Shown here in pieces: positions 30,759 to 55,211 of a DNA stretch of 64,000 bases. The notes below the pieces were generated by a model that made no database searches, was not told where the DNA came from, and saw nothing but the letters and a program-made list of their open reading frames with translations. Source of the DNA: Octopus bimaculoides (lineage: Eukaryota); the NCBI RefSeq assembly GCF_001194135.2, contig NC_068983.1:135047921-135111920 (forward strand), given 5' to 3'. The position numbers and the translations under genes are program-made. The first letter of the stretch is position 1, and each line of letters opens with the position of its first letter.

Positions 30759-30901
30759 TTAACTGCTGGTTTCCTCACGAATGATCTCATTGACACCTCT
30801 CATCATTTCAGTGACAGCCTCATACTCTGTGAGACCCATACGGCGTTTATTAGAGATATCATAGACACCGCCAACACTTTCTGTATGTTCACCATGGATA
30901 C
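30759..30901 (-). CDS. AK: Arginine kinase last coding exon: (G)[46 protein letters not shown]
   Basis: TTTTAG acceptor; GEHTES and DISNKRRMG motifs; TAA at 30761-30759. Exon lengths sum to 1050 nt (isoform A, 349 aa) or 1047 nt (isoform B, 348 aa). Confidence 0.96.
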
Positions 30902-31008: not shown

Positions 31009-31189
31009 CTCTGGCCTGGAGGTTGTATTTGTCGCAGATACTTTTGAAGTCTGGTCTCTGAGAAAGCTTAGGGATCTTAATATGCACACTAGCCCTCATG
31101 GTAGTACCCAAGTTGCTTGGGCAGAATGTCAAGTAACCCATGTTGTCTTTCTTTGCAAACTTCAGTTTCTTCTCCATTTGATGGATAGC
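31009..31189 (-). CDS. AK: Arginine kinase exon 5: AIHQMEKKLKFAKKDNMGYLTFCPSNLGTTMRASVHIKIPKLSQRPDFKSICDKYNLQAR(G)
   Basis: TTTTTCAAG acceptor, GTAAAA donor. CPSNLGT active-site signature with the reactive Cys. Confidence 0.97.
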
Positions 31190-32555: not shown

Positions 32556-32721
32556 ATTGACCAACCTCTTGTAGACTTCACCCAAGTTACCACCCTTCTG
32601 CATGGAAATCAACCTAAGATGATCTTCCTCATTGACCCAGCACAGAAAAGTCTTATTGGCACTGAAGTAGATGCCTCTGCCAACAGGCCAGTCATCATAA
32701 CCACTAGCTGCCTTCAAGAAT
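32556..32721 (-). CDS. AK: Arginine kinase exon 4: (R)[55 protein letters not shown]
   Basis: TTTCAG acceptor, GTAAGT donor. Contains the catalytic NEEDH motif. Translated by hand; absent from the ORF track. Confidence 0.97.
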
Positions 32722-34400: not shown

Positions 34401-34549
34401 CTGTCAGAATCGTTAAAGAGGAAATGATCGTCAGTCAGTTGCTTCTGAACTTCAGGAGTCATGTTGCTGAGGGGGTAATAGCTACCAGCCAATTCACCGT
34501 CAAGGGATTTCAAAGCCTCAACGGACACTTGTTCCATTTTAACACGGTC
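34401..34549 (-). CDS. AK: Arginine kinase exon 3: DRVKMEQVSVEALKSLDGELAGSYYPLSNMTPEVQKQLTDDHFLFNDSD(R)
   Basis: CAATAG acceptor, GTTAGT donor. DDHFLF motif; phases consistent. Confidence 0.97.
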
Positions 34550-34960: not shown

Positions 34961-35220
34961 CTCTTTCTTAAGAACTGGTGGGAAGCCAAAACTGTCGTGG
35001 CTCCTGCCTACGCGGACACGTGTAGATACAATCAAGTTACCAGATGGATCAAGATCACCGATGTTCAAGTTATTGACATCACCAAAGTCTGGAACTGGGT
35101 GGGAGACTTTATCAATTTTATGGTAGTCCATGATAACGGCATCAAGGACTTCAGCAAATACAGTGTATGCATCGGGATCGCTAGCGTAGATACCTACACC
35201 GCTGTCAGGGTTTTTGCAAC
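34961..35220 (-). CDS. AK: Arginine kinase exon 2: (G)CKNPDSGVGIYASDPDAYTVFAEVLDAVIMDYHKIDKVSHPVPDFGDVNNLNIGDLDPSGNLIVSTRVRVGRSHDSFGFPPVLKKE
   Basis: TTTTCTAG acceptor (phase 1), GTATAT donor. Contains the DSGVGIYA guanidino-specificity region and STRVRVGRS. Confidence 0.97.
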
Positions 35221-37715: not shown

Positions 37716-38065
37716 ACTCTTTTACTTGTTTCAGGTATTTGACTGCGGCCATGCTGGAGCACCGCCTTTAGTCGAACAAATCTATCCCTGGACTTATTCT
37801 TTGTAAGCCTGGTGCTTATTCTATTAGTCTCTTGCCGAACCGCTAAGTTACGGGGACGTAAACACAGACACACAAACATATACACACACACATACACATA
37901 TATGACGGGCTTCTTTCAGTTTCCGTCTACCAAATCCACTCAGAATTCTTTGGTCGGCCCGAGGCTATAGTAGAAGACACTTGCCCAAGGCGCAACGCAG
38001 TGGGATTGAACCCGGAACCATGTGGTTGGTAAGCAAGCTACTTACCACACAGCCACTCCTGCGCC
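37716..38065 (-). mobile_element. Full-length tRNA-derived CORE-like SINE with 9-bp TSD in AK intron 1
   Basis: Minus head ggcgcaggagtggctgtgtgg...ccgggttcaatccc (A/B boxes) and ccttgggcaagtg core. atacattat lies on both sides (37707-37715 and 38067-38075). Confidence 0.9.
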
Positions 38066-40903
38066 TATACATTATGGTAGCGATTTATTTTTTTCTTTTC
38101 TCATGCACATAGTAAATACATTTAATCTTGTCAGATTGTCTCAACATTAAGACATACATCGATAACGTTTGGTTCCTGGAGAGAAAAAAACTGACAAACA
38201 CATTACACAAACCAGGAGAGATGGAGTTTCATCAGAAGTAAATATGGTGTCAAAACATGGAAATTTCACTCTTACCAAACAAGAGTTTACTCGTCTTGTT
38301 TCCACCAAATTATCTAGGTCACGTTGATTTAATATGTATTCAGAGAGCAAAAAGGAATTGTTTTTTTCAATTGTGTCAAAAACATCGGTTTGTAGGATTC
38401 AAAAGAATGGAAGCTAATTTTACGTCATTTACAGGATAAATTTGAAACTTTGAACAATGGGTCACTGAAATGTATGTATAAAGAACTAAAGGCGATTACT
38501 TCTCAGACATCACTTAATCACTCGACTGTGACAACAAAAGTGAAAGTGATGTCCTATTTTAGTATAGGACATAACTTTCGACAAAACAAATATATTTTAA
38601 ACGTATTTCTTTTAAATTGATATTTGATTTTAAGGTCCGTTAATAAATCAGTTTGAAATCCCGATTAGGAAACCTTAAAACCTTTCTGAGAAATACACCC
38701 AGATTATTTTTTTTTAATTGTCCAAAATATTACCTAAAAATAAGATGGGTAAAACATGAGCCTAGCCAATGATCTGGTTTCAATTCTGCTTGGACGCCAT
38801 TTCGCTTCATTGTTATTCATTCACCCCGAGATAGCCGCTGTGTGGAGTCTACGTGAGCTAAAAATAGCAGCCAAATTTACCTCAAATCTCACTCCATCAT
38901 GTAAGAAAAGGACACAATGGATATGACCCCCAGTTCCCTGCATACTGGAAAGGTAATGGGATGTTCGTAAGTGGAATGCATTTGATCAAAGGTTTAATTG
39001 ATCAAGGCTGACCTAGTGTTAAACAACTAATGTCATGAGGAAAAGAACGACAGTCACAACCTCCACACTTCTTCTTCCATGATAGAGCTATTTCTCTTTT
39101 CAACTGCCAGCTTAACGCTCCATGCAACTTGAATGTGTCATATACTATCTACTAACATACATGAAATGGCAATTTTAAAAGGACACTAATGAGCAATAAA
39201 GCGGTTATAGATTAAAGTTATCCGTTTGGCAGTATATATTCGCTGAACGTAAATCCCACAACAAAAATACAAGATAAATAGGTATACGAGGCCCATAAGG
39301 TTTCAGTCGAATTTTTTTTTTTTTAATCAATAATTTCGAAATAGGGAAAAATGGTCATTAAATGTGAAATCAGTTTCGTTACACGGGGATTTAGTTATAA
39401 TAAAAATTAGTTCTGATGAGGGGTAAGGCCACCAATTCCGGGTGATTAGTCGATTAAATCGACCTTAGTACTAAGTTATCGACCCCATACAGACGAAAAG
39501 CTAAGTTGACCTTGAAGGGATTTAACAATATTAATAAATTATTTTTTGACAGAGGAACAAAGAGAGCAGTTTTGAGATGAGGGGCAAGTTGATATCATCG
39601 ACCCAATAGTAGACTGAAATTTTATCGACCCTGGTGAGAAAAATATTGGCGAGTAGGAATTGAACTCAAAACAAAGAACCGTCGTAAATTACCGATTCCG
39701 CTGCTCTTTTTTTAAAATTTTTTTTTATAATAACGATTTTTATTTTCCAGAGGTGTCGGATAATATTATAAATAAACAATGGGCAAAGAATATTCTAAAG
39801 AAAAAGAATACGAGAATGGCAAATAAATCTGTCGAAGTAAGATAAAAATCATAGCCATGTTGACTGACAGATTGAAAATTAAGGTCATTATCATCTTTCA
39901 GGCTGACAGAGAATGAATTAAAATAGCAGTTTTAACAGAGGCAAATTCAGGTGAAGGAGATGAGAGAAAAAGGGTGCTAGTCGAAAGAGAGGAGATAGAA
40001 GCAGGAAACTAGCAGCTATTGTTTAGATTTATTGATGAGAGAGAAATATTTCAACTATTTATCAGCGTTCAAGAACCTTTAATAGCAGAATGAATGGAAA
40101 ATGAGAGAGGAATGCTATTGAAGAAAGAAAGCAGAGATTTTGGATCGATTTTAAAATGCATTCACATTACTGATAGATTTGAGTGTAAGTCAGTTGATAA
40201 ATATTGTTAGTGAGGAAAGTACACAGATTAATGACTACCGTTAGTGTCATGATAACAGGATTTCTCTCTTGTTAGCCGACCACCCAGACTACTAAAGAAC
40301 AGCGTTGATAGTTGAAACTGACACTAAATAGTTTCACAATGAAATAACGGAAAGATTCATTTCTTCTATGTTATAGTAACACATTGATGAACAAAATAAT
40401 TAAATTTTATACGAGAAAAAAAAAAGTCGAAATAATATAATATTTAGTAGTGACAATCAGCAATATTGAAATTCCTGTTAGCTAAGTTTTATTTCACAAA
40501 ACAGTGAGTATATTATCTATTGAGGGTCAGCGGTAAACGTCAAATTTGGTATATATGTACATGTATGTGTGTATATGAGTATTCAAATGCAGCTGTCATT
40601 ATTTAAATCACACTTTTACAGCATTCAATATGTGTGTGTGTAGATTGGATGCTATATTAGCGTATGATTTAAATAAGCTATTTAAAACGGGTGCAATAGT
40701 AAAATTACCTATATTTCTTATGAAAGAAGGCATATCCTTTTAATATTTCAATTATATTTTATTTAAATGATAAATATAAAATGACAATTGTAAAAGAATA
40801 ACTATCACAACTTCTCAGAACCCATTAATAAATTTTAGACACCTTAAATGCATGTGAAAAAAAATGATATAATATCAATTTATTAAACATTTTCTTAGCT
40901 TAC

Positions 40904-41051
40904 CAGAACGAATACAATCTGCCAAAGTGCCTCCGAATTTAGTTTTCTTGTTCTTCAGTTTTTCATACCTGGCTGGTGTTAAATGTTTTTTCAAAAGAGA
41001 TTTACTATCAGCCTTTTTCAAAGTCTCCCACAATTCTTTAAGGTCAGACAT
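40904..41051 (-). CDS. AK: Arginine kinase alternative first coding exon B (proximal): [49 protein letters not shown](G)
   Basis: ATG at 41051, phase-1 GTAAGC donor at 40903. 34/51 aligned positions identical to exon A. Confidence 0.92.
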
Positions 41052-41160
41052 ATTCTTAGATTGTGAGCAAAAAAAAGCAGCTGTGTAAGGCAGAAAGTGG
41101 TTGTATCTGGACAACCGATAGCTACAGATAGATTTGACTAACTGTAAGAAGGTGCGACAG

Positions 41161-41221
41161 TGGACTGCACTCAACAAAGCCAGGCTTTTATACCCCATTA
41201 ACTGGGCTTCACTGTGATTGG
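41161..41221 (-). promoter_or_regulatory. Core promoter of AK exon B: CCAAT (41221-41217), TATAAAAG (41192-41185), putative start near 41161
   Basis: Minus strand reads AACCAATCACAG...GGGGTATAAAAGCC. A CA dinucleotide places an A 31 nt downstream of the TATA first T. Confidence 0.7.
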
Positions 41222-42083
41222 TTGATTCTTGTGTCATGCACACATCATGCACGTTCTATCAATGCTTCGTTTGGGAAACGGTAGATACGATTTCAACGTC
41301 TTGTGTAGTTTGATTTTTAGCAACGCTCTGTGTGTATATGTCTATATATATTATATTTAATTATATTATATTATATGTATATATTCTCTGTGCACACCCA
41401 CATACGTCTACGTATGTATTTACTGGTTAAGTTAAAGGATGAAGGGCAGCACCAATGACCTTTTTCAGGTTTCCCCCTATAAACTAATGAAAAATTAAGA
41501 AAAAAGTTATTTGCAGATAAAAAAAAAAACCTGGTTCGAATGCTTGTAATATGAAGTGGAGTCCACTAACGACACTAAATGAACTGGTATTAAAGGGAGT
41601 GGGTTCTTAATACTAGAAAAGATCACCCCCTCCCAGGCAGTTTGCATCTAACATTTTACCTGCGAAGTTATGTGTGTGTATGAGATTTATATATAACACA
41701 CACACACACACACACTCACATACACACACAGAGGCAAACTACTGAACTATATATATTTACAGATACCCATATATGTATATCCATGTATATCTATTTCCAT
41801 ACATGTATATGCCAAAGCATTTCAGTTTTCAGATTTACGCATTTAATTGAAAATATAGGGTTAACAATAATTATATCTAAGTAGATATTGTGTATAGAAA
41901 TGATTGCATTTTTATTGCATATTTACATTTAAATGTGTGTTTGTGTATGTATAATACATAAAAATATATATTCGCATACAATAAATATAAATATATGCAT
42001 ACATTACATACGATATATTTGCATTCTAAATACAGATACACATACTTTAAACAGGTATGTATTTGAAAACTATGCTTGTGTAT

Positions 42084-42121
<38 letters not shown>

Positions 42122-42620
42122 ACATTGAAATTAAATAGTATTTGGATCTCTCTATTCATCTATCTATACAAGCACATATGTATACACATAACACACACAC
42201 GTATCTATACATGTGTGTGTGTGTATAGCTATATATGTATGTATATATTATATATAGTACTTATATGTAAGTAGCTTTTATAGTCTTTCCCTTTCCATTC
42301 TCGCATTCCATTTATTTTCTCTCCATTTGCAGTATCTTAAAATTATATTTAATGCTGTTGTTTAACAGAATAAGCATCTTCTTTAATACATCTCTTGATT
42401 TATTTTTGTTTGTTTTTTTTTTTTTTCCTGTCTCGCTCAGCTCTGTGCTTTATATCACCTATATCTTATACATTTCCCTTGTTTACTTTCACTTTCTGTA
42501 AAGCGGTACGGAAGGACTACACAAAACATTTTATGATACATACATGTGTGTGTGTGTCTGTGCGTTCTTAAACAAGAATATTATAGTGCCTTCGAAGTTT
42601 CGACCAGTTAAACCATATTA

Positions 42621-42692
42621 CATGTATGTATGTATGTATGTATGTATGTATGTATGTATGTATGTATGTATGTATGTATGTATGTATGTATG
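42621..42692. repeat. (ATGT)n microsatellite
   Basis: Seen directly. Other long simple repeats include (GA)n 43026-43091, (AT)n 49959-50012 and many (CA)n. Confidence 0.95.
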
Positions 42693-43043
42693 CACACACA
42701 ATAGCCTCGATATCTGCTCTCTTAGAAGTATGTGTCTATCAAGCTAAGATTTTTTTTTAATACAAATAACAGAACCAAAAAGCTCTAATAGGTTTTACTG
42801 AAAATTCCTTTGAAAAAGACTCTTGCAATATTTGTATACATTCTGACTCTTAGAAAGACTTCTTACCACATCCCTGTCTAAATATATCAGGAAGATAAAA
42901 CCACTAGTTCCATTGAAAAACATGTACCCCACCTATATTAACTGCACTAGAAGGTGTCACTTGTCACTCAGACAAGCGTAACTGGTTTTTGGAATTGTCA
43001 ACAGGATAATTTCAAACTACCAATTGGCTAAAATAATTTATTA

Positions 43044-43094
<51 letters not shown>

Positions 43095-44179
43095 GCTATA
43101 CCCTGAAAAATTGTCATACAAGAAAACAAAAAGCATTTAGCATTAAAAGCAGAAACTTTATTAATGAGCCATGTTTCTTGATTTTATGTGTTTTACACAA
43201 ATGATACTGAAAGACAGGAATATGTCACGTGTTTTTTGCATTGGGATAGATGACTAAATAAATATTATGCATATAACGATTGTGTAAATAATTTTTTATT
43301 TGTTTGTCGGCAATCAATCAAATCTTGTTTTACCATATATTCTTATATGTTTAGGAATATGTTTGCTTATATGTTGTCACGCTGCTTCTCTAGACTCCTT
43401 CGATTAATTAGCAACGCAAAACAGTCATAATTTAAGAGGTTTCGGCTTCTAATAAAATATAGACTCATTACTATATGAACTGAGTACTTTTTCTTTGTAA
43501 ATAAAAGTTTGCCAATGCATATACCTGTGTGTATGTATATGTGAACGTGTGTGTGTGTGTGTGTGCGCGCGCGCGCGCCTGGTGTGATATCTTATTTTTT
43601 CCGTAATATACAACTAGCAAAGAAAACAGGAAGAAGCACACGCATATAAGACAAATACACATTCACAAGCAGGTTCATATGTATGTATGTGCGTCCTTGT
43701 CCAGTTGTGTTGTTAGCATGTAACTGACAGTTTATCGAAGTACCTTACATAATCAAATTACATACATTAATACGCATGCCAAATATCGATTTTTGGAATT
43801 AGTTCTGTGGGCAGAATTGGTTTTGTCAATGTCATCGACACATCATTATTTGACCGACACCAAAATGTTTTTAAAAAGAATACAAGACGAAAGAAATGAG
43901 ATTTCAGTTCACAGCTGAGCGGGACGAGGCTTGTGAAGGTCAAACGACTTTTTAGCCAGATTAATTACATTCCCTACACATGTACAAGCCATATATATAT
44001 ATACAGTTGGCTTACATAGTTTGTGTATGTGTGTGCGCGGGCATATACTCATAAATATATGTGTAAGGGTATATACGCACACACACACACATTGATATAT
44101 GCACGTGTGAGTAGCCTTTAAAAATGATAAACTCCTAGTTGGTCGGGGGATGGGATGGAGAATCTAACTTTACATACTC

Positions 44180-44760
44180 CAGTAGTAGTAGTAGTAGTAA
44201 TACCACGGCCACCACCCCTAGTACACTGAGCAAAGCAGTCGATGATACAGAAAAAAGAAATTAAGAAAAACAAACAAAAACAGAAAAAACAAAGGGGGAT
44301 AGTCACTACTGGAAAGCCTTCGATCGTAAACAACAAAACTGGGAGTGAAGGAGGCTGCTGTTTGCCTCATAATTTGACATTACCGAAATGTGTGTGCGCG
44401 GTAGTGGTCTTGATCGCAAGACAACACTACTACTACCACCACTACCAGTACCATTTATTACAAGACACATCACTACTTTTCTACTACAACCTCTACCGCT
44501 ACTACAGTCACCACCACAACTACTACTACGATAATGAAAATCATCGCCACCACTTTAAATACTACCACTTCTAGTAAGTATCATCAACGCCACCACAACC
44601 GCCGTCAAACACTACCACCCAAACTATTACAACCACTACCAATAGTACTACTACAACCGTCACTACTACTTACCATTAGCGCTGCCCGAATAATGTATAC
44701 AACCTCACTGGGTGACATGAAAGGGTATATGTTGGTAGTAGTAGGGTTTGTTATCTTTAC
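44180..44760. repeat. Degenerate (CTA/CAC)n low-complexity tract
   Basis: Imperfect actact/ccacca trinucleotide arrays. Confidence 0.7.
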
Positions 44761-45503
44761 ATACTCCAGTATGTTCCTAGAGTTTATCTTAAGCGTGTAT
44801 GTGTGGGTGTGGGTGCGTGCGCGCGTATGTGTACTAACACATACATTAAATATGTGTGTGCGTGTATGTGTGTCCGAAATCTATCAGTGGCGATTCGTGT
44901 TCATTAATGTAAAATCATAGTCAGTACATTTTTTTTTTTTAATATGCATACAGTCTAGAGTCCTGTCTGTCTGTATTCCATGGAAAAAATCTAAGCAGTT
45001 TACTAATCTTACTCCAATCTGATCTAACTACATTTAAAAGAAATAATATGCATGCGTGCACACTTAACTCGACAACTGATCAGTGCACAATGATCAGCAT
45101 GTCGATATGCCTACATTTGTAAAAATTTTCCTAAACAAAGTACCCAAGGGGATTGACTCAGGTGTGGTGTAGATGACAACTCACCTGACAAATGATTTTC
45201 AGCTGACAATTTAAATGTTGGTTACTTTACATAGTTGATCCATTATAGTTTATTCTCATTTATTTAACAAAAATAAGGAGAGCTGTAATAGCTACAAATA
45301 AATATTTAGTGTGGTTGGAGGGAGTTTAACAGAAAAGACAAAATTTCTTTCGTTTTTAATTTTTAATGCATTTCGATAATAAAAAAAACATTTGGAAGCT
45401 TTTTCTCTAGTAAGATGGGTGATGGGAAGAATGTTCTACTTAAAAAGTGAAAACTTTTCGTTTAAACATTAATTCTTCTAATTAATATTTTGTCGCTTAA
45501 TAA

Positions 45504-45718
45504 GACAGCGAGTTGGCAAAATCGTTAGCACGTCGGACGAAACGCTTCGCGGTATTTCGTCCGTCTTTACGTTGAGTTCAAATTCCGCCGAGGTCGACTT
45601 TGCCTTTCATCCTTTCGGGGTCAATAAAATAAATACCATTCAAGCACTTTGGTCTATGTAATCGATTTACCCCTCCCCTGAAATTACTGCCTTTGTGTCA
45701 AAAAATGTGAAACCAATA
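45504..45718 (+). mobile_element. Relatively young tRNA-derived SINE (Meta-domain-like core)
   Basis: gacagcgagttggcaaaatcgttagcacg...gagttcaaattccgccgaggtcgactttgcctttcatcctttcggggtc; CpGs are retained. Confidence 0.85.
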
Positions 45719-46895
45719 TCTTGTCTTTCTCAACTGACAAATATTTACTTCTCGACAGAAATGCGAGCCGGTGAAAACAGCTGTTCTCAAGCCATTGTGA
45801 AACTAAAGAATGTCCAAGGTTGAGAAGCTTTCGTTTGCAACTGAAGTTGCAGGGATGACTGGGAAGAATTGTATTAGTCTAAATAGTTTCTGAGGTAGCA
45901 AACAATAAACCCAGTTTATGAAGTAACTTTAAAATGTCATTGCCATTATACATAAACCTGAGCTCATTTGCCGAAGAAAGGTAATTAAACAATTTGCGCA
46001 GCAAACACCCATATATGTTGCATAGGAGATGTATTAGAAAACCCTTCAATCTTCTTCACACCAAAATATAAAAATTACTTAATGTAAGCAAATCACTTAT
46101 ATCAAAACAAACAGGAACTACTAATATGTGGATATGATAAAAGAAAAACAACAATCCTGAATTATTGGACTGCCTTGCTTTAAGACTTTCTATCCAAAGA
46201 AGAATCAAAATAGTTTTCAGAGTTACAGGTATAATACTAAACTGCGTGATCCTAATGATGTGTTTCTGAACAGTTTCGGAAAACGTCAATTTATGGTTAA
46301 TTTTCTTTCGCTTGTTTAATTATGGGGTGAAGTGAAAGGAACTGAGTTCAAGCCATCTAATCATCCAACGTCAGCCATTATTTATTGCTCAATAGATTAT
46401 CAATTCCACTGAGTATATCTTCACCCGACCTTTCATTGTTCAAAATATTTGGAAATATACCTTAAGTTTTCACAAATTCTTTCTGATTAACAGTTTTCTG
46501 GATGGAATGCTGTTCTTCGAAATTCTAAAGACACTTTTTCTGCTTTGTAATAGATATAAATTTACTAAAGATGCGTAAATTTGAAGTTAACTAACACACT
46601 CTACCAAGTAAACTTAAGACGAAGAATGGTGTTGTAGGTCGACCGATAACCAAGTTATGCCTATTATCGCATTTTGTTAGAGTTCCATATGGTAAAGATG
46701 TGGATGGGAAAAATGTGGGTAGAGGGTGATGTGCTAGCAACGCTCTCCCCTTACTGTTTTACCAAGTAAACAACACAAATAACTACGCAGAGGCAGCCAT
46801 GGTTGAAACAAGAACAAGAACAACAAGCATTATTAAAAGAGAAAAGAAGCACGGTCATTCGTTAACCAAATGACCTTATCTTATTGCCCATCACT

Positions 46896-47308
46896 TTTAT
46901 GCGCTCATAAATTAGTTTGATAGTTGAGCTCTAATTGGCTGTATGCAAATGAGTTCATAACTGGGGTCCGGAACTCTCGTANNNNNNNNNNNNNNNNNNN
47001 NNNNNNNNNNNNNNNNNNNNNNNNNNNNNNNNNNNNNNNNNNNNNNNNNNNNNNNNNNNNNNNNNNNNNNNNNNNNNNNNNNNNNNNNNNNNNNNNNNNN
47101 NNNNNNNNNNNNNNNNNNNNNNNNNNNNNNNNNNNNNNNNNNNNNNNNNNNNNNNNNNNNNNNNNNNNNNNNNNNNNNNNNNNNNNNNNNNNNNNNNNNN
47201 NNNNNNNNNNNNNNNNNNNNNNTTTATGCGCTCATAAATTAGTTTGATAGTTGAGCTCTAATTGGCTGTATGCAAATGAGTTCATAACTGGGGTCCGGAA
47301 CTCTCGTA
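46896..47308. other. 86-bp exact duplication flanking a gap (46896-46981 vs 47223-47308); probable assembly overlap
   Basis: Identical sequence lies on both sides of N 46982-47222. Confidence 0.85.
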
Positions 47309-47899
47309 GAAAAAAAAAATTTCGCGTCCTGGGCGGTACTCATTCTAGCTACGCTTCTTATCGATACAGTCAATATTTCTGTCTGTTTGCAATGAAACGA
47401 AACTCAATTTCAGTTCAAATTACATCAACTATAACTACCAATAATCTGTATAAGGTCGTGTACTGTAGTAGAAACTCTTGAAAATATTTTGATCCTTCTT
47501 TGATAGAAAATATTGATAGAGATTCGCTATTTCAGCAAAGTAATCCAATATTTCACAATTGTCTTTTTCTTTATAATGTGTCTACGTACTAACACTTTTT
47601 GTTTGAAGTGTTTAATGTAGCGTTTTGTTTGGAGTGATATCTAAAATAACGTTTTGTGTGAAATAATATATGGTACAACATTTACATTTTTAAATACTAT
47701 CGATTTTCAACAAATTTGTTATGCTGTTCTTTCTCTTAAAACTTCGCAGATTCAATTAACAGCAGTTACTATGTCAAACAAACCAATATTTTGTGGTTAT
47801 TTAAGTGACTTTGAATGGTGTTTGCAATCAATCAGAATGTGTTAGTAGTTACTCTATCTACTACGACAGGAATATAACTTGCTTTCAACTGTCAGCGTT

Positions 47900-48985
47900 A
47901 ATAATTGATTCTTTTATTGGCCACAAGGACTTACATAGGACAACATGGGACATAACAGGACGATACAACAAGTTTTAAAAACGTATAAACAAAAATTATT
48001 AAAATTAAACAAACAAAACTCCCAATTGGGGGAGGCGCTTTAAGGCTACTCGTGGAAAAACCCGCAAAAGCCACAGGTGCCTGACCAACAGAGTAAGAGC
48101 CCTTTTTTTTTTTTCCACAGGCGCATGCTCAAAATGGGTCCTTTCATACTGGTCATTTTTCCGACATCCACCCGCCTTTCAACAAATTTGCTAGAAAGCA
48201 ACACTTCCCTCTCCACCCTCGCTTTCCTTTTCAAGTGAAACTTGAAAAAGTTTATGAGGGCTTGGCCAAAGAAGAAAGTGTCTGTCTTTAGCCCTTTCAA
48301 GCGTGACCACCACACTACCTCTTTCGTTACAGCCACCAGACAAATAAAAATTGTCTTCCCCTCCCGCCCAAAGGAGGGCGGCGGGATAATCTTCACNNNN
48401 NNNNNNNNNNNNNNNNNNNNNNNNNNNNNNNNNNNNNNNNNNNNNNNNNNNNNNNNNNNNNNNNNNNNNNNNNNNNNNNNNNNNNNNNNNNNNNNNNNNN
48501 NNNNNNNNNNNNNNNNNNNNNNNNNNNNNNNNNNNNNNNNNNNNNNNNNNNNNNNNNNNNNNNNNNNNNNNNNNNNNNNNNNNNNNNNNNNNNNNNNNNN
48601 NNNNNNNNNNNNNNNNNNNNNNNNNNNNNNNNNNNNNNNNNNNNNNNNNNNNNNNNNNNNNNNNNNNNNNNNNNNNNNNNNNNNNNNNNNNNNNNNNNNN
48701 NNNNNNNNNNNNNNNNNNNNNNNNNNNNNNNNNNNNNNNNNNNNNNNNNNNNNNNNNNNNNNNNNNNNNNNNNNNNNNNNNNNNNNNNNNNNNNNNNNNN
48801 NNNNNNNNNNNNNNNNNNNNNNNNNNNNNNNNNNNNNNNNNNNNNNNNNNNNNNNNNNNNNNNNNNNNNNNNNNGCATGTCTGCGCATCAGCAACTACGG
48901 CTTCGCTAGCCCCCCACCCCCCCATTCAGCGGGTGTTTGAGCGCGTCCTTCATTTCGGTAAACGCCTTCCATCTTGTCTTTATTC
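47900..48985 (-). mobile_element. L1/Tx1-like LINE 3' fragment spanning a gap
   Basis: GC-richer ORF end KEVVWWSRLKG...LINFFKFHLKRK.RVER..., with similar sequence across the 48397-48874 gap. Clade call is tentative. Confidence 0.55.
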
Positions 48986-48999
48986 TCTTCGAGAACATA

Positions 49000-49200
49000 T
49001 TTGAAATGAAATATTTCGAGAACTGAAGAGAATGATAGATGTGATCGCAGAATACCGAATGTACAAGTTCTGCTGAGCTGGACATGTAAGGTTCACAAAC
49101 AGAAGGTGGACCTGTGCAATTCTCGAGTGGCATCCAAGAGACCAGAAAACGTTTTAGTTAAGCGATATGGGACGAGATGGGACGAGATGGTGCAATCAAG
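49000..49200 (+). mobile_element. Degenerate RTE-like LINE C-terminal fragment
   Basis: Translates to AGHV.RFTNRRWTCAILEWHPRD, the (W)AGHV.R...RW....W.PR motif. Confidence 0.6.
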
Positions 49201-49559
49201 AACTGAAAGTGCATTGTGACCAACGATGTATAACAACATCTGATAGTTTGGTCGATACAGTGACATGTATATAGATAGATAGACGGAGAGAGAGAGAGAG
49301 AGAGAGGGAGAATGTATTTGTGACTGAGAGTATATGCATTTAAATCATATTTTTGTATCGATGGTCAGATGGATGGATGAAAGCACGCATTGATTATATG
49401 TGTTTATGTATATGTATGCATCTATTGAAAAAAATCACGGCTGCGCATTCATTCAAAATATACCACTGAACTTGAACATTTTTTTTCTTATTTTTGTTTT
49501 TTAATTAAATTCCCAGTTACATGATACTTTCATTAACTACTCAGTGATTTGAACAGATA

Positions 49560-49598
<39 letters not shown>

Positions 49599-49954
49599 GT
49601 GCCGGTTCTGTTTGACCTCGTAATTTAAACCATGGGCTTGCTTAATGCGCTGCCCTGTGCACTAAGTTAAACACATTGAATAATGTAACCCTCGAAACAT
49701 TATCTTATTTTTAACGAAAGAAAAAAAATTAGGTAGTCATAGCTGAAACATTTTTATTCATAGGCCTGCCTGATCGAGTTTGATCATAGATTTAAAAAAA
49801 AAAAACAAAAAAAAACTATCAAGTTTAAGTTCTTTGTTAGGCTTGATAGTCAGCTGCTTCTCTTGTTGCTAGTATGTGGGATGTGTTATTAATCAGCAAG
49901 TTTAGCCATGGACTACATAATCCGTATGACAGAATAACTCTGGGTTTGAGCTCG

Positions 49955-50012
<58 letters not shown>

Positions 50013-51860
50013 NNNNNNNNNNNNNNNNNNNNNNNNNNNNNNNNNNNNNNNNNNNNNNNNNNNNNNNNNNNNNNNNNNNNNNNNNNNNNNNNNNNNNNNN
50101 NNNNNNNNNNNNNNNNNNNNNNNNNNNNNNNNNNNNNNNNNNNNNNNNNNNNNNNNNNNNNNNNNNNNNNNNNNNNNNNNNNNNNNNNNNNNNNNNNNNN
50201 NNNNNNNNNNNNNNNNNNNNNNNNNNNNNNNNNNNNNNNNNNNNNNNNNNNNNNNNNNNNNNNNNNNNNNNNNNNNNNNNNNNNNNNNNNNNNNNNNNNN
50301 NNNNNNNNNNNNNNNNNNNNNNNNNNNNNNNNNNNNNNNNNNNNNNNNNNNNNNNNNNNNNNNNNNNNNNNNNNNNNNNNNNNNNNNNNNNNNNNNNNNN
50401 NNNNNNNNNNNNNNNNNNNNNNNNNNNNNNNNNNNNNNNNNNNNNNNNNNNNNNNNNNNNNNNNNNNNNNNNNNNNNNNNNNNNNNNNNNNNNNNNNNNN
50501 NNNNNNNNNNNNNNNNNNNNNNNNNNNNNNNNNNNNNNNNNNNNNNNNNNNNNNNNNNNNNNNNNNNNNNNNNNNNNNNNNNNNNNNNNNNNNNNNNNNN
50601 NNNNNNNNNNNNNNNNNNNNNNNNNNNNNNNNNNNNNNNNNNNNNNNNNNNNNNNNNNNNNNNNNNNNNNNNNTATATATATATATATATATATATGCAT
50701 GTGTGTATGTATGTATGTATGCAGGTATATATATGCAAGTATGTATGAATGCAGGTATATATATATGTGTGTATACATGTATATATATTCTTTGTATTAT
50801 TACATTATTGAACGCACACGTCCTTTTTTGCAAGTAAGTCTACTATATATATATATATATATGTATATATCATCATCATCATTTAACGTCTGTTGTGGTG
50901 GGATGTGGGGTTGATGCTAGTCAAAAACCACAACACCACAACCTATCACTTGAAAAATGTCACACTTGACGTTTTTTTTTTAAAATCTTGGAAGTGGGTA
51001 AGAGTGTGCATTCTTCAATGGAATTAGCATTTTGTGTTTAATGATAACTTTTAATTTTTGACCAAGACCTTTTTCAATTATAATATCTACTATATGCTGT
51101 TTTGAAATTTTAATCATAACAGCTATTTTTTTCTGCTGATATAGTAATTTTTACAATTAATATTCATGAATTTTTGTTAAAAAATATAATAGTTAAAACA
51201 ATTAACTCTACGTTACTTGTGTCAGATTTAATCAAAGAGCATAAACTGCAGTTGGATCTATATATATAGTTATTTAAAAGTTTTCATTGTTATATCCCTG
51301 AACTTTTAGATATAATGAAGATTTTCAAAGAAAACAGTAAACTTTCTTTGATATTTCAAACTTTTCATAATTTTATTTTTTGTTTTGCATTTTTTCCCCC
51401 AAAATTTCATCGTAATGTAATTTCAGTTTAAAATGTACAGAATTTTTTTTAGCCCAGTTGAGACCAAATTATCTATGCATTTCAATTTTATAAAAAAAAT
51501 TCAATAATTTAGAGGAATTTAATAAAATAATGAATGGTGCTGTAAAACTGGTGTATGGAACATAAATATTCTTACATAAAATTGTGATGAAAAGTCTTAA
51601 CTTAAATATGAACAGTTTGAAATAAGAAGTTTCGTGTCATCGATCTTGGGGTGGTCTCAAGTGGGATGATATCAAGAGTGAAATATTACTTCTAAACTTG
51701 CTAACATACATAATAATACATTTTTAAAATTAAAATAATTAACTTTTTAATAATGTCTTTTTTTTTTTTATCATAATATATATATTTGTTTTTTGGTTTT
51801 TCTTTGGTACATTCACTCATAGAAAATAATAAAGTTTTTCAAATATTTTTTGTATCTTAC

Positions 51861-52011
51861 CTGAACGGATGCAATCTGCTATAGTACCACCAAACTTGGT
51901 CTTTAAACCTTTCAACTTATCAAAACGTTCCTTAGTGAGATGTTTCTTCAATAAAGAATGACAGTCCTTTGCAGCCAGAAGAGTCTGGAATAGTTCTTCT
52001 CCATCAGCCAT
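51861..52011 (-). CDS. AK: Arginine kinase alternative first coding exon A (distal): [50 protein letters not shown](G)
   Basis: ATG at 52011, phase-1 GTAAGA donor at 51860. SLLKKHLT...KTKFGGT.ADCIRSG is the phosphagen kinase N-terminal domain and resembles the recalled octopus muscle AK N-terminus. Confidence 0.93.
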
Positions 52012-52086
52012 AGTTATAACTTAGTTAATGTTCCAAGTATTGGGGTAAAATAGTCAGATGCAGCAAAGAAAGCTGCTTGCCAGGGG

Positions 52087-52131
52087 TTTATATACCTGTT
52101 CATCTCCTCAGGATTAGCTCATTTTTATTGG
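52087..52131 (-). promoter_or_regulatory. Core promoter of AK exon A: CCAAT (52131-52127) and TATATAAA (52094-52087)
   Basis: On the minus strand AGCCAAT is followed by GGTATATAAACC, about 80 nt upstream of the ATG at 52011. Confidence 0.7.
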
Positions 52132-52321
52132 CTAAAAAGAAAGGTAACAGGCAGAGTAGTTTTGGAGTTCATAGTATTTATAAAAAAAAAAATTAAGAAA
52201 AAAAGGAATTCTCTTTTGGAGCAGGGTTAGGGTGGAAAATTTAGAATAGCTATGAGAAGACAGCTGTATGTGTACTTAGGTGTGTATGCATTTATGACGT
52301 AAAAGTGTATTTGTGTGTGCA

Positions 52322-52362
<41 letters not shown>

Positions 52363-53400
52363 AAGAGTGTGAGACATACAGACAGATAGACAGAGTATGA
52401 GAAAGTGTGTGTGTGTGTGTGTGTGTGTATACACCTGTATATAATTATTAGACCCTTCCATTCATATTCTTAGTGTGTATGTTTTATGCAAATCCAAATG
52501 TCTTACCAATCTCAGAGAAGCAGCTTTGGGGGTGAGGTGTGTGGGGTTGATGCTAGTCAAAAACCAATGAAAATAAGGTGAATTAGGTGGCTAAGTAACC
52601 CTGATTGGGGTAAGTAGCTAAGTGAAACAGTATTATGGGGTGAAGGGAGGTACCAAAAGTAAGAAACCAAAATGGAATGATTATTATTTCATAGGCTAAC
52701 ATTCTGGGACAGAAAGCAGCATCAACTGTGCCAAAAATACAGCAATATCTGTTATCTTAAATTTCATTTGTATGTCTTTATTCTCTCTCTCTCTCTCCCC
52801 CCTCTCTCCCCCCCTCTCTCTNNNNNNNNNNNNNNNNNNNNNNNNNNNNNNNNNNNNNNNNNNNNNNNNNCTGTACAGTATATGTATCAGTATTTATATT
52901 AGAAAGTAACTGTGTACAGGTAACTCTAATGTATATTAGTAAATCTAATATATATATAGTCTTTGTATATCTATTAGAATTTCTATATGGAATTGCTAAA
53001 TTATTATTAAATTACTTTATGCATTAATAATTGTTTCTTGGAAGTCAAAATAATAATTTGAAAATTGTAGCTGTTCATTTTGTGTTAAGAATATTAATGG
53101 AAATGAGTCAACCAGAGAGCCTCTACACAGTTGATTAGTATCCTGGAAATAGCAACCAATTACACTCAATTGTCTTTAAGAAAAACAAAAAAAAAAAAAC
53201 GAGAGGGCTAGAATTAGAATACTTTTGCTCATCAACATTAATTTGGTGATAAATAACAATATTGGCAAACATTTTAAAATTTTACTTTCTATGACCGATT
53301 TCTACATTAAAGGAGACATTTATAACTTAGTTATTCTCAAATTATTTCACTGATCTCTGATTGCCTCTATTGTGAAACCCTTTACCTGAATGTAAATATT

Positions 53401-55211
53401 GATTTCAAATTTTGGTACAAGGCCAGCAAGTTTGGAAGAAGGATAAGTCGATTACATCAACCTCAGTGCTCAACTGGTCCTTATTTTATTGACCCTGAAA
53501 GGCTGAAAATCAAAGTCAACCTTGGTAGCATTTGAATTCAGATGAAACACCATTAGGCATTTTGCTTGGCACGCTAACAGTTATGCCAGTTTGCCACCTT
53601 CTTGAATGTAAATATTAAGATAATGATTAAATTAATCTCAGTATTCAACTGGTACTTATCTCAAAAGGATAAAAGAGAAAGTTAAGCTTGGCAGAATTTG
53701 AACTCAGAATATAATGAGTCAGAAAAAATACCTTTAGCCCTTTCATTACCAATCTGGCTAAAACCGGCTCTGGCTCTTTAGTATAAATGTCTTGTTTTCA
53801 TAATTTTTGAATTAAAATCTTCCACCAAATCTTAGTCACAATTTATGTTCCTAACACTAGCTTAATGATAACAAAGTTATTTTACTAAATTCTTTGTTAT
53901 ATTTAAAATAATTGAAAGAAACACAGAGCATCTCAAAATAAATACAGTAATGAAAGGGTTAAGCATTTTTCCCCAGTATGCTAACGATTCTGCCAGCTCA
54001 CCACCTTTAATCCTTTCTACTACATGCACAAGGCCAGAAATTTTGTGGGGTGGAGCTAATCAGTTGCATCAACCCCAGTGCTCAACTGGTACTTATTTTA
54101 TCCAAAAGGAGGAACGACAAAATTGACCTTGGCAGGACTTGACCCCAGAGCATTAGGAGCTAAAAGAAGTATTGCCAAGCATTTTGTTTGACTTGCTAAT
54201 GATTTGACCAGCTCACTGCCTTAATAATAATAATAATCCTTTCTACAAAAGGCACAAGGCCTGAAGTTTTGTGGGAGAGGACTAGTCAATTACATTAACC
54301 CTTGTGTTTCACAGGTACTTAATTTATCAACTCCGAAAGGATGAAAGGCAGCTGACCTCAGTGGAATTTGAACTCAGAATGTAGCGACAGGTGAAAAACT
54401 GCTAAGCATTTCACCCAGCATGCTGCTAATGACTCTCCCAGCTTGCCAATTACTACTACTAATAATAATCATTTCTACTTTACGCACAAGGCCTGAAATT
54501 TTGGGGGAGGGGGCTAGTTGATTAGATCAACCCCAGTATGCAACTGGTACTTAATTTATTAACCCCGAAAGGATGAAAGGCAAGGGCGACCTTGGTGGAA
54601 TTTGAACTCACAACATAGCAGCAGGCAAAATACCACTAAGCATTTCACCCAGTGTGCTAACAATTCTGCCAGCTCGCCACCTTAATAATGATGATAATAA
54701 TGATAATAATAATCCTTTCTACTGTAGGCACAAGGTCTGAGATTTTGGGGGAGGGAGTAAGTCAATCACATCAACCCCAGTATTTGACTGGTACTTAATT
54801 TATAGACCCCGAAAGGTTGAAAGGCAGTCAACCTTGGCGGAATTTGAACTGAGAACATAAAGACAAGTGAAATGCTGCTAAGTATTTTACCTGGCGCAAT
54901 AATAATAATATTAATGATTTCTGATTTTGACACAAGGCCAGCAATTTAGTGGGAAGGGCATAGTTAATTACATCAACTCCAGTGCTCAAATAATACTTAC
55001 TTTATTGACCCCAAAAGAATGAAAGGTAGAGCTGACCTTGGTGGAATTTGAACTCAGAATGTGAAGCATGATGCTTTACCAATTATACCAACTCACCATC
55101 TTAATAATAAGAATAAGAATAATGTGTTTATTGATTACAATAAGGTGTAATATGACTTATGAGAAAAAGGTATATGTGGGGAAACTGAAAGAAGCCCGTC
55201 GTATATATGTG

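What the first reader, a model, noticed from the sequence alone, without database searches (positions are those of the whole stretch)
40904..52011. One arginine kinase body, two duplicated and intact first coding exons (N-domain-swap isoenzymes)
Seen: two exons 11 kb apart encode homologous AK N-termini (MADGEELF... 50 aa; MSDLKELW... 49 aa). 34/51 aligned positions are identical, both are free of stops, and both end at the same codon (CIRS-G) with a phase-1 GTAAG donor. Only one set of exons 2-6 is visible downstream. Established: the N-terminal helical domain of phosphagen kinases closes over the guanidino substrate, and the specificity loop itself (DSGVG) is in the shared exon 2. Inference: an old exon-1-plus-promoter duplication yields two isoenzymes with identical catalytic cores and different N-domains. 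The motif core ([22 protein letters not shown]) is conserved while surrounding residues diverged, which suggests both are under selection. Exon A resembles the octopus muscle AK as I recall it; exon B may be an under-described tissue-specific form. This differs from the two-domain AKs of bivalves, which duplicated the whole gene.
Basis: partly seen in the sequence, partly recalled or inferred. Interest (0 to 1): 0.85.

Follow-up and report, generated by a model that had tools for sequence, protein, structure and literature searches.

The report
Octopus arginine kinase: two alternative first exons
The single muscle-type arginine kinase gene of Octopus bimaculoides has two promoter-plus-first-exon units feeding one shared body, giving two enzymes that differ only in their first 50 residues; the arrangement is real, transcribed and shared with cuttlefish, and it is already in gene annotations but apparently undescribed.

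Summary
Confirmed. The gene lies on the minus strand. Exon 1A (52011..51861) and exon 1B (41051..40904) are intact paralogues, 34/51 identical. Both end in phase 1 at a GTAAG donor and both splice to the same exon 2 (35220). There is one set of exons 2-6.

RNA contigs show both junctions. Use differs by sample: five runs hold only 1B, and two runs hold 1A at 14- to 350-fold excess. Each exon has its own CCAAT+TATA promoter, and RNA depth drops about 30 nt downstream of each TATA.

The three assembly gaps are intronic: one is spurious, one sits in a (TA)n repeat, and one is collinear with O. vulgaris. Four gap-free relatives (O. vulgaris, O. sinensis, Argonauta, Sepia) show the same 1A-1B-body layout with no hidden AK exons, so the pair predates the octopus/cuttlefish split.

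Both exons are under purifying selection. B is the more conserved and more basic form (pI 8.1 against 6.6).

Isoform B is already in databases (A0A0L8H9P1, CAI9720216, the Sepia 'SPAK' cDNA), with a spurious 49-aa extension. I found no paper describing the architecture. Gastropod AK genes have three such first exons.

This is a new member of a known kind, of moderate interest.

The parts
52088..52131 (-). Core promoter of exon 1A: CCAAT box 52131..52127 and TATATAA 52094..52088
   Evidence: Read directly. CCAAT at -120 and TATA at -83..-90 are conserved in O. vulgaris, Argonauta and Sepia.
51861..52064 (-). Exon 1A. The 5'UTR starts at an inferred TSS near 52056-52099. CDS is 52011..51861 (MADGEELF...CIRS + G of a split codon), with a GTAAG donor in phase 1.
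   Evidence: RNA depth is about 86,700-86,900 (X3) below 52100 and 60 above it. Loose end GGGTTTTTGCA at 51859 equals the start of exon 2. Loose end at 35222 equals the 3' end of 1A.
41186..41221 (-). Core promoter of exon 1B: CCAAT 41221..41217 and TATAAAA 41192..41186. The ATG at 41198..41196 inside the TATA region is the false start of the annotated 397-aa models.
   Evidence: Both boxes are conserved in O. vulgaris and Argonauta. For the 397-aa models.
40904..41161 (-). Exon 1B. TSS lies near 41161. CDS is 41051..40904 (MSDLKELW...CIRS + G), with a GTAAG donor in phase 1.
   Evidence: Joint 40904->35220 (GT..AG) appears in X25, X28, X29 and X33. RNA depth falls from thousands to about 150 or 0 between 41124 and 41172, and an X3 contig ends at 41161.
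40751..41451 (-). Highly conserved block around exon 1B (promoter, 5'UTR, exon, start of intron)
   Evidence: Identity between O. bimaculoides and O. vulgaris is 97-100% here, against about 87% for the surrounding intron.
34961..35220 (-). Shared exon 2 (GCKNPDSGVGIY..., guanidino-specificity loop)
   Evidence: It is the acceptor used by both first exons.
34401..34549 (-). Shared exon 3
32556..32721 (-). Shared exon 4 (NEEDHLR motif)
31009..31189 (-). Shared exon 5 (reactive Cys, FCPSNLGT)
30759..30901 (-). Shared exon 6 with stop codon TAA 30761..30759
46982..47222 (.). Assembly gap 1, intronic and spurious (the contig ends overlap)
   Evidence: The same ~74 nt stand on both sides. The flanks overlap by 85 nt in O. 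vulgaris.
48397..48874 (.). Assembly gap 2, intronic, next to a high-copy repeat
   Evidence: It corresponds to O. vulgaris L006 12438-12984 (547 nt, no AK similarity). An X18 contig runs 116 nt into the gap, and the 30 letters shown match L006 12955-12984 at 29/30.
50013..50673 (.). Assembly gap 3, intronic, inside a (TA)n microsatellite
   Evidence: The unaligned interval that contains the gap corresponds to about 256 nt in O. vulgaris.

Best explanation
This is one arginine kinase gene of Octopus bimaculoides (product A = RefSeq XP_014774299.1) with two mutually exclusive first coding exons. Each exon is driven by its own CCAAT+TATA promoter and each splices in phase 1 to the same exon 2.

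The unit 'promoter + exon 1' was duplicated in tandem before octopods and decapods diverged, and both copies have been kept since. The upstream unit (1A) gives the slightly acidic form (predicted pI 6.6). It reaches very high levels in a subset of samples and matches all AKs cloned from cephalopod muscle. The downstream unit (1B) gives a basic form (pI 8.1). It was present in every sample examined and was the only form in several.

Shown: the architecture, both splice junctions, separate depth steps at each promoter, sample-specific use, conservation across four other cephalopod genomes, and purifying selection.

Inferred: A is the muscle form and B the general or non-muscle form. Also inferred: the 17 residue differences change surface or stability properties of the small N-terminal domain rather than substrate contacts. 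They include W8/F8, A28/E28, K36/L36, loss of Cys17 and a net charge difference of +4.
For: - Gene model and ORFs.
- Identity of A with XP_014774299.1, and B present as 397-aa models.
- Joint 40904->35220 in four RNA runs at contig depths 85-893.
- 1A->exon 2 seen from both sides as loose ends.
- Contig depths, 1A against 1B: X3 about 86,700 against about 6,000; X33 30,000 against 85; X1 265 against 4,796. In X25, X28, X29 and X36, 1A is 0 against 217-941..
- Depth steps about 30 nt downstream of each TATA box.
- Promoter boxes conserved across species.
- Same 1A-1B-single-body layout, without gaps, in O. vulgaris, O. sinensis, Argonauta hians and Sepia pharaonis.
- dN/dS against Argonauta: 0.20 (1A), 0.043 (1B), 0.088 (body).
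- B exon more basic in all four species; pI 6.61 against 8.11.
- A processed pseudogene in O. vulgaris derives from a B-type spliced mRNA.
- A 5'RACE cDNA from S. pharaonis is B-type.
- Both isoforms pass Pfam cut-offs for both AK domains.
Against: - Tissue labels of the runs are coded, so 'muscle against general' is inferred.
- Only assembler contigs were available, and their depth is a poor measure of expression.
- Contigs carrying 1B continue at low depth 500-670 nt upstream of the TATA box. Some transcripts therefore start further upstream, and the TSS is not mapped at base resolution.
- No enzymatic or localisation difference has been measured.
- Exon 1 holds no known substrate-binding residue, so the protein difference could be functionally slight.
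- Within Octopus, 1A has dN/dS 0.41, which suggests relaxed constraint. 1B shows 3 non-synonymous and 0 synonymous changes, numbers too small to interpret.
They rest on the exact match to the RefSeq protein and on cross-species tblastn.
Confidence: 0.85

Rival explanations
1. Regulation-only duplication. The two units matter only because they provide two promoters, one very strong and restricted, the other broad. Under this reading the 17 amino-acid differences are neutral history with no effect on the enzyme.
For: - Exon 1 encodes no substrate-contact residue (established AK structures), and the specificity loop is in shared exon 2.
- The strongest nucleotide conservation around 1B covers promoter and 5'UTR as much as the coding part.
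- 1A evolves fast within Octopus (dN/dS 0.41).
Against: - Type-specific residues are kept in every coleoid sequence examined. W8, A28, K36 and Ser17 are invariant in all five B sequences. In the eleven A sequences the matching positions are F/Y8, E/D28 and L/V36, and position 17 is Cys in ten of them but Ser, the B-type residue, in Argonauta.
- The charge difference is conserved in four species.
- dN/dS of 1B against Argonauta is 0.043, as low as the catalytic body.
Confidence: 0.3
2. Different subcellular targeting. The alternative N-termini would send the same catalytic body to different compartments, such as mitochondria, flagellum or myofibril, as in Drosophila Argk1 or Trypanosoma brucei AKs.
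For: - Precedent: Drosophila Argk1 splice isoforms have different localisation (PMC13585230).
- Gastropod AK genes do have a first exon with a long N-terminal extension (Aplysia X1, Gigantopelta X1).
- A and B differ by about 4 charges.
Against: Octopus A and B are the same length to within one residue. Both start M-[AS]-D directly at the first helix of the domain, with no presequence, no Gly2 for myristoylation and no extension. The annotated 49-aa extension of B lies upstream of the main TSS and is not conserved in Sepia.
Confidence: 0.1
3. Assembly artefact or hidden second gene. The two exon 1 copies would belong to two tandem AK genes, with the second body lost in the assembly gaps, or one exon 1 would be a collapsed or misplaced haplotype.
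For: Three N-runs lie between the two exons, and gap 1 is indeed a scaffolding artefact.
Against: - Four gap-free assemblies of relatives have the same layout and no AK-like sequence between 1A and 1B (best tblastn E 0.48).
- The O. bimaculoides interval is collinear with O. vulgaris across all three gaps.
- Both exons join the same exon 2 in RNA.
- The exons are only 67% identical, which is not allelic.
Confidence: 0.02
4. Exon 1B is a decaying relic or a prediction artefact that is not translated.
For: The exact 348-aa B protein is not in the protein collection. Only 397-aa models with an odd extension are present.
Against: - The ORF is intact in five species, with 42/49 to 46/49 identity to O. 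bimaculoides.
- Spliced RNA is abundant and is the sole form in five runs.
- A B-type cDNA was obtained by RACE in Sepia.
- dN/dS is 0.043.
Confidence: 0.01

Closest known systems
Drosophila melanogaster Argk1 (one AK gene, seven splice isoforms with different N-termini)
   Same: A single arginine kinase gene supplies several isoenzymes that share the catalytic body and differ at the N-terminus through alternative 5' exons. The isoforms are used differently between cell types (PMC13585230).
   Different: In the fly the long isoforms carry N-terminal extensions that change localisation to mitochondria. In octopus the two first exons are homologous, of equal length and replace each other within the folded domain. 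No targeting sequence is visible.
Glycocyamine kinase alpha/beta chains of the polychaete Neanthes (Hediste) diversicolor
   Same: As I recall from Suzuki et al. 1999, J Protein Chem 18:13, the two chains differ only in roughly the first 50 residues and were ascribed to alternative, mutually exclusive N-terminal exons. That would be the same exon and the same position as here. The reference is listed in PMC6429109, but the paper itself was not readable here.
   Different: It is a different phosphagen kinase, dimeric, where alpha and beta form heterodimers.
Annotated AK isoforms X1-X3 of gastropods (Aplysia californica, Gigantopelta aegis, Babylonia areolata)
   Same: The architecture is the same: two or three homologous first coding exons in tandem, all ending ...DCIRS|G in phase 1, upstream of one body. 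An A-like signature (LK-x-LKTKFGGT) occurs in one exon of each array.
   Different: There are three exons rather than two, and one carries a long extension. Orthology with the cephalopod A/B pair is not statistically supported. These are known only as automatic annotation.
Vertebrate creatine kinase isoenzymes (M-CK, B-CK)
   Same: They form a muscle-type and a general or brain-type cytosolic phosphagen kinase with different charge and tissue distribution.
   Different: The CK isoenzymes are whole-gene duplicates that differ along their whole length. Here only the first 50 residues differ, and the forms come from one gene.
Two-domain (contiguous dimer) AKs of bivalves and sea anemones
   Same: They are also a duplication within an AK gene. 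The closest solved structures include 4RF6.
   Different: There the whole coding unit was duplicated and fused into one 80-kDa polypeptide. Here only promoter plus exon 1 was duplicated, and the copies are used alternatively.

Membership tests
Arginine kinase / phosphagen (guanidino) kinase family | N-terminal helical domain (Pfam PF02807 ATP-gua_PtransN) | tested here: met
   A scores 94.4 bits and B 98.0 bits against a cut-off of 25.7.
Arginine kinase / phosphagen (guanidino) kinase family | C-terminal catalytic domain (Pfam PF00217 ATP-gua_Ptrans) | tested here: met
   About 258 bits for both isoforms against a cut-off of 22.4. The E-value to solved AKs such as 5ZHQ and 4BG4 is 5e-127.
Arginine kinase / phosphagen (guanidino) kinase family | Reactive cysteine motif C-P-x-N-L-G-T and NEEDH motif | tested here: met
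   FCPSNLGT is in exon 5 and VNEEDHLR in exon 4, read directly in the translation.
Arginine kinase / phosphagen (guanidino) kinase family | AK-type guanidino-specificity loop (D-S-G-V-G-I-Y) | tested here: met
   NPDSGVGIYA is in shared exon 2. The nearest named relatives are molluscan AKs, including the allergen Oct f 2.
Arginine kinase / phosphagen (guanidino) kinase family | Catalytic activity on arginine + ATP for each isoform | not testable with these tools
   This needs recombinant A and B. The AK purified from Sepia muscle was active, but its isoform is unknown (PMC5427814).
Alternative promoter / mutually exclusive first-exon gene | Two first exons, each joined to the same downstream acceptor and never to each other | tested here: met
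   The 1B->exon 2 joint is seen in four runs. 1A->exon 2 is seen as loose ends on both sides. No 1A->1B joint was seen. Both exons end in phase 1 and 1B has no acceptor before its ATG, so joining them would break the frame.
Alternative promoter / mutually exclusive first-exon gene | A separate transcription start for each first exon | tested here: inconclusive
   Each exon has a conserved CCAAT+TATA pair, and RNA depth drops about 30 nt downstream of each TATA. Runs with 1B RNA and no 1A RNA exclude initiation at 1A. However, only contigs were available, and low-depth RNA continues upstream of the 1B TATA. No CAGE or cap data were available.
Alternative promoter / mutually exclusive first-exon gene | Differential use between tissues or conditions | tested here: met
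   The A:B contig depth ratio ranges from 0:893 (X25) to 30,000:85 (X33). Tissue names are not available.
Tandem exon duplication | Homologous sequence, same length class, same splice phase, same order in related genomes | tested here: met
   The exons are 34/51 identical and 151 against 148 nt long, and both have a phase-1 GTAAG donor. The order 1A-1B-body holds in five cephalopod genomes.
Tandem exon duplication | Promoter duplicated together with the exon | tested here: inconclusive
   Both promoters share CCAAT, then 25-30 nt, then GGTATA(A/T)AA(G/A)CC..TGGC. The rest of the upstream sequence does not align, so homology of the promoters is plausible but not proven.

The most novel reading that the evidence does not exclude
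The tandem array of alternative AK first exons may not be a coleoid invention. It may be an ancient molluscan feature that predates the cephalopod-gastropod split. Under this reading there are conserved exon classes with distinct roles: an A-like class with LK-x-LKTK, a B-like class with ELW...KKTK, and a class with a long N-terminal extension seen in Aplysia X1 and Gigantopelta X1. Lineages such as chitons and mussels would have replaced the array with separate genes.
Probability: 0.25. Interest if true: 0.55.

Novelty: new member of a known kind. Interest (0 to 1): 0.4.

Why it matters
Cephalopods power jet swimming and fast arm movements through the phosphoarginine system, yet their arginine kinase is treated in the literature as a single enzyme. 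This locus shows that coleoids make two isoenzymes from one gene and have done so since before octopuses and cuttlefish diverged.

There are practical consequences.
- Published cephalopod 'AK' sequences are a mixture of the two forms. Octopus, Amphioctopus, Sepiella and Sepioteuthis cDNAs are A-type, while the Sepia pharaonis SPAK cDNA is B-type. Cross-species comparisons, homology models and allergen (Oct f 2) work may therefore compare non-equivalent isoforms.
- The deposited B models in O. bimaculoides and O. vulgaris carry a false 49-aa N-terminal extension that starts at an ATG inside the TATA box region.
- Argonauta lacks an annotation of B.

The pair also offers a natural experiment. 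The catalytic body is identical and only the first three helices are swapped, so the role of the outer part of the phosphagen kinase N-domain can be tested directly.

Tried and rejected
1. Hidden second set of body exons. A lenient tblastn of the whole AK against the window and against the 1A-1B interval of four gap-free relatives gave only chance hits. Rejected.

2. Direct bridging of the gaps with DNA-run contigs. A stretch around gap 2 gave a contig entering the gap but none crossing it. The question was resolved indirectly through collinearity with O. vulgaris.

3. The 397-aa 'long B' protein as a real N-terminally extended isoform. Its ATG lies in the TATA region upstream of the depth step, and the extension is not conserved in Sepia or in a squid-like transcript. 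Rejected.

4. Search with only the first 136 residues of B. It returned mostly fragments and was of little use, apart from revealing the O. vulgaris pseudogene and a genomic read-through ORF.

5. Deep orthology of cephalopod and gastropod first exons, tested with an NJ tree of 36 exon-1 peptides. Bootstrap values were below 50% for all deep nodes. Left open.

6. Universality in molluscs. A chiton locus and a mussel locus have a single exon 1. Not universal.

7. Tissue identification. Run metadata are coded, and library words hold no tissue terms. No PacBio RNA run could be listed.

8. Re-checking body exon junctions with reads.

9. Rfam scan of the window. There were no matches at gathering thresholds.

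10. Literature. Nine searches found no description of alternative first exons in molluscan AK. A 2024 AK review never mentions splicing or exons.

Full report
WHAT IS THERE

The window is Octopus bimaculoides chromosome CM046603.1 of assembly GCA_001194135.2. The locus fetched for the encoded protein is letter-for-letter the reverse complement of window 20759-62011, gaps included.

An arginine kinase (AK) gene lies on the minus strand. Reading the sequence and translating it gives these exons:
- Exon 1A, 52011..51861 (151 nt): [50 protein letters not shown] plus one base.
- Exon 1B, 41051..40904 (148 nt): [49 protein letters not shown] plus one base.
- Shared exons 2-6: 35220..34961, 34549..34401, 32721..32556, 31189..31009 and 30901..30759.

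All boundaries are AG/GT. Both first exons end in phase 1 at a GTAAG donor. 1A+body is a 349-aa ORF and 1B+body a 348-aa ORF.

tblastn of the full protein against the window finds each body exon once. It finds the two first exons at 34/51 identity (E 5e-14) and nothing else above chance.

THE GAPS

The three N-runs flagged by the scan lie in the 1A-1B intron and touch no exon.
- Gap 1 (46982-47222) is a scaffolding artefact. The same ~74 nt stand on both sides, and in O. vulgaris the two flanks overlap by 85 nt.
- Gap 3 (50013-50673) sits in a (TA)n microsatellite. The whole unaligned interval around it corresponds to about 256 nt in O. vulgaris.
- Gap 2 (48397-48874) abuts a high-copy repeat. 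An independent O. bimaculoides run has a contig that continues 116 nt into the gap. The 30 letters shown match O. vulgaris at the expected orthologous position, 29 of 30. That position is the edge of a 547-nt segment with no AK similarity.

The whole O. bimaculoides locus is collinear with the gap-free loci of O. vulgaris and O. sinensis. In four gap-free assemblies (O. vulgaris, O. sinensis, Argonauta hians, Sepia pharaonis) the interval between 1A and 1B is 8.1-9.5 kb. The best tblastn hit of the whole AK in that interval has E 0.48, which is chance level.

TRANSCRIPTION AND SPLICING

Only assembler contigs of public RNA runs were available, so depths are rough.

The junction 40904->35220 (GT..AG on the minus strand) is present in all four runs first examined, at contig depths 893, 858, 217 and 85. 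The 1A->exon 2 junction is seen from both sides:
- At 35222, contigs of run X33 continue with GAACGGATGCAATCTGCTATAGTACC, the reverse complement of the 3' end of 1A.
- At 51859, a contig continues with GGGTTTTTGCA, the reverse complement of the start of exon 2.

Use is strongly sample-dependent:

| Run | 1A depth | 1B depth |
|---|---|---|
| X3 | about 86,700 | about 6,000 |
| X33 | 30,000 | 85 |
| X1 | 265 | 4,796 |
| X25 | 0 | 893 |
| X28 | 0 | 858 |
| X29 | 0 | 217 |
| X36 | 0 | 941 |

1B RNA was present in every run examined. Runs with abundant 1B and no 1A show that 1B transcripts do not start at the 1A promoter.

PROMOTERS

Upstream of 1A there is a CCAAT box (52131..52127) and TATATAA (52094..52088). 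Upstream of 1B there is CCAAT (41221..41217) and TATAAAA (41192..41186). The 1A pair is conserved in position in O. vulgaris, Argonauta and Sepia. The 1B pair is conserved in O. vulgaris and Argonauta.

RNA depth falls from tens of thousands to tens between 52000-52099 and 52100-52199. For 1B it falls from thousands to about 150 or zero between 41124 and 41172, and one contig ends at 41161, about 30 nt downstream of the TATA box.

Low-depth RNA continues 500-670 nt upstream of the 1B TATA box. Minor upstream starts therefore exist, and the TSS is not mapped to the base.

The two promoters share the pattern CCAAT, 25-30 nt, GGTATA(A/T)AA(G/A)CC..TGGC. This is compatible with co-duplication of promoter and exon but does not prove it.

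WHAT IS ALREADY DEPOSITED

Isoform A is exactly XP_014774299.1 / A0A0L8H9E4, 'arginine kinase Oct f 2'.

The exact 348-aa B protein is not in the protein collection. A 397-aa version is present for O. bimaculoides (A0A0L8H9P1) and for O. vulgaris (CAI9720216). Their extra 49 residues begin at the ATG 41198..41196 inside the TATA region, upstream of the main start site. The extension is unrelated in the Sepia and squid-like B models. It is a longest-ORF artefact.

In Sepia pharaonis both forms are annotated on one scaffold (CAE1233396 is A, CAE1233398 is B). The 'SPAK' cDNA obtained by 5'RACE (AKS26488) is B-type. Its authors compared it with A-type sequences of other species without noting isoforms.

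The cDNAs of Amphioctopus fangsiao (Oct f 2), 'O. vulgaris' BAA95609, Sepiella maindroni and Sepioteuthis lessoniana are A-type.

Nine literature searches found no description of this architecture in molluscs. A 2024 review of AKs does not contain the words splicing or exon.

AGE AND SELECTION

The order 1A-1B-single-body is the same in O. vulgaris, O. sinensis, Argonauta and Sepia. The duplication therefore predates the split of Octopodiformes and Decapodiformes, which I recall published clocks placing at a few hundred million years.

Nei-Gojobori estimates against O. bimaculoides:

| Region | O. vulgaris | Argonauta | Sepia |
|---|---|---|---|
| 1A | 0.41 | 0.20 | 0.075 (dS saturated) |
| 1B | 3 non-synonymous, 0 synonymous | 0.043 | dN 0.08 |
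| Body | 0.053 | 0.088 | 0.064 |

Both exons are under purifying selection. B is constrained as tightly as the catalytic body, and A about twice as loosely.

The stretch from 400 nt upstream to 300 nt downstream of the 1B start codon is 97-100% identical between O. bimaculoides and O. vulgaris, against about 87% for the neighbouring intron.

An intronless, degenerate copy spans residues 20-204 of a B-type mRNA on another O. vulgaris chromosome. It shows that the 1B-spliced mRNA was present in the germ line of an ancestor.

WHAT THE PROTEINS DIFFER IN

The 17 differences are A2S, G4L, E5K, F8W, Q9E, L12K, A13K, a one-residue deletion, C17S, H18K, K27P, E28A, F30Y, D31E, G35N, L36K and I44L. They change the predicted pI from 6.61 (A) to 8.11 (B). 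The B exon is more basic than the A exon in all four species compared.

Some type-specific residues are kept in the coleoid sequences seen:
- Position 8: W in B, F or Y in A.
- Position 28: A in B, E or D in A.
- Position 36: K in B, L or V in A.
- Position 17: S in B, C in ten of eleven A sequences. Argonauta A has S.

Both isoforms pass the Pfam cut-offs for the N-terminal and catalytic domains. The N-domain model covers residues 16-80, so exon 1 supplies the N-terminal tail and about half of that domain.

From the established AK transition-state structures, the substrate contacts of the N-domain lie in the loop encoded by exon 2 (DSGVGIY). None lies in the first 50 residues. 'N-domain swap' is therefore too strong. 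The swap concerns the outer helices of the small domain.

Neither form has a presequence or extension that would suggest targeting.

MOST LIKELY MECHANISM

Two alternative promoters each deliver their own version of the first 50 residues to a common body.
- The upstream unit is a very strong, restricted promoter. It gives the form found in all muscle-derived cDNAs, so I infer it is the muscle form.
- The downstream unit is broadly active and gives a basic form.

The architecture, the splicing, the separate starts and the differential use are shown. The tissue assignment and any enzymatic consequence are inferred.

The main rival is that only the promoters matter and the peptide differences are neutral. 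I give it about 0.3, because type-specific residues and the charge difference have been kept in all coleoids examined. Targeting (0.1), assembly artefact (0.02) and dead exon (0.01) are poorly supported.

COMPARISON WITH KNOWN SYSTEMS

The closest described case is Drosophila Argk1. It is one gene with seven splice isoforms that have different N-termini and localisation (PMC13585230).

I recall that the alpha and beta chains of Neanthes glycocyamine kinase differ only in about the first 50 residues through alternative exons. The reference is listed in PMC6429109, but the paper was not readable here, so this is unverified.

Automatic annotations of gastropods show the same design with three first exons. 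Aplysia has exons at 10001, 36455 and 38944 of L004. Gigantopelta has exons at 10001 and 14626 plus an unannotated intact one at 20144-20332 of L005.

One chiton AK locus and one mussel AK locus have a single first exon.

An NJ tree of 36 exon-1 peptides places cephalopod A with a Gigantopelta exon and cephalopod B with the general gastropod type. Bootstrap support is below 50%. A pre-cephalopod origin is possible but not shown.

VERDICT

This is a new, well-conserved member of a known kind: an alternative promoter and first-exon gene. It is already captured, imperfectly, by genome annotation but apparently not described.

Interest is moderate. It explains why published cephalopod AK sequences fall into two N-terminal types. 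It also flags annotation errors and provides a clean natural experiment on the outer N-domain of phosphagen kinases.

Noticed in passing
window 41196-41198 (minus strand); proteins A0A0L8H9P1 and CAI9720216: The deposited 397-aa 'long' isoform B models start at an ATG inside the TATA-box region of the 1B promoter, upstream of the main RNA depth step. The 49-aa extension is almost certainly a longest-ORF artefact.
   Followed up: yes
window 46902-46981 and 47229-47302: The sequence on the two sides of assembly gap 1 is the same ~74 nt. The contig ends overlap, so the 241-N gap plus one repeat copy is a scaffolding artefact.
   Followed up: yes
L008 14996-15544 (O. vulgaris OX597818.1): This is an intronless, stop-containing copy of a B-type AK mRNA (residues 20-204 contiguous across three exon junctions). 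It is a processed pseudogene, annotated as a 158-aa 'arginine kinase'.
   Followed up: partly
L002 19331-19480 (Argonauta hians); L005 20144-20332 (Gigantopelta aegis): These are intact alternative first exons that the deposited annotations do not use: 1B in Argonauta and a third exon 1 in Gigantopelta.
   Followed up: partly
window 40751-41451: About 700 nt around exon 1B are 97-100% identical between O. bimaculoides and O. vulgaris, against about 87% nearby. The exon itself has 0 synonymous but 3 non-synonymous differences. The constraint looks to be on the nucleotide sequence (promoter or UTR), not only on the protein.
   Followed up: partly
window 37550-38150, 41650-41750, 42050-42150, 43050-43150, 52300-52500, 53800-54700: Short intronic or intergenic segments have RNA-contig depths of 10^3-10^5 in every run, with many chimeric joints. 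They are presumably high-copy transposable-element or SINE-like repeats expressed genome-wide. Window 54222-54891 is a ~232-nt tandem array.
   Followed up: no
window 59608-60108 (-) and 61869-62264 (-): These are transposon remnants upstream of the gene: an ORF with an endonuclease/exonuclease/phosphatase domain (LINE-type) and an ORF with the Mos1 transposase HTH_48 domain (mariner-type), the latter cut by a gap.
   Followed up: partly
window 24535-24669: A perfect 34-nt tandem repeat is present in 4.0 copies at 100% identity, downstream of the AK gene.
   Followed up: no
window 41068: There is a length polymorphism (one extra A on the + strand) in the T-run of the 1B 5'UTR. It is carried by about 1-10% of contig depth in three of the four runs laid there.
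   Followed up: no
protein BAA95609 (P0006) against L006: The 2000 cDNA labelled Octopus vulgaris has an A-type N-terminus (MAEELFKELQEAKECHS) and body closer to Amphioctopus fangsiao than to the O. vulgaris or O. sinensis genome sequence (MADGDELFALIQGAKDCHS). The source animal was probably another species.
   Followed up: no
window 52056: One X33 contig leaves the genome at 52056, inside the 1A 5'UTR, and continues with 27 unrelated letters (TATTTTTGTTGTTATCCATGGATAATA on the + strand). There is no AG acceptor there. It is probably a chimeric contig at the transcript 5' end.
   Followed up: no
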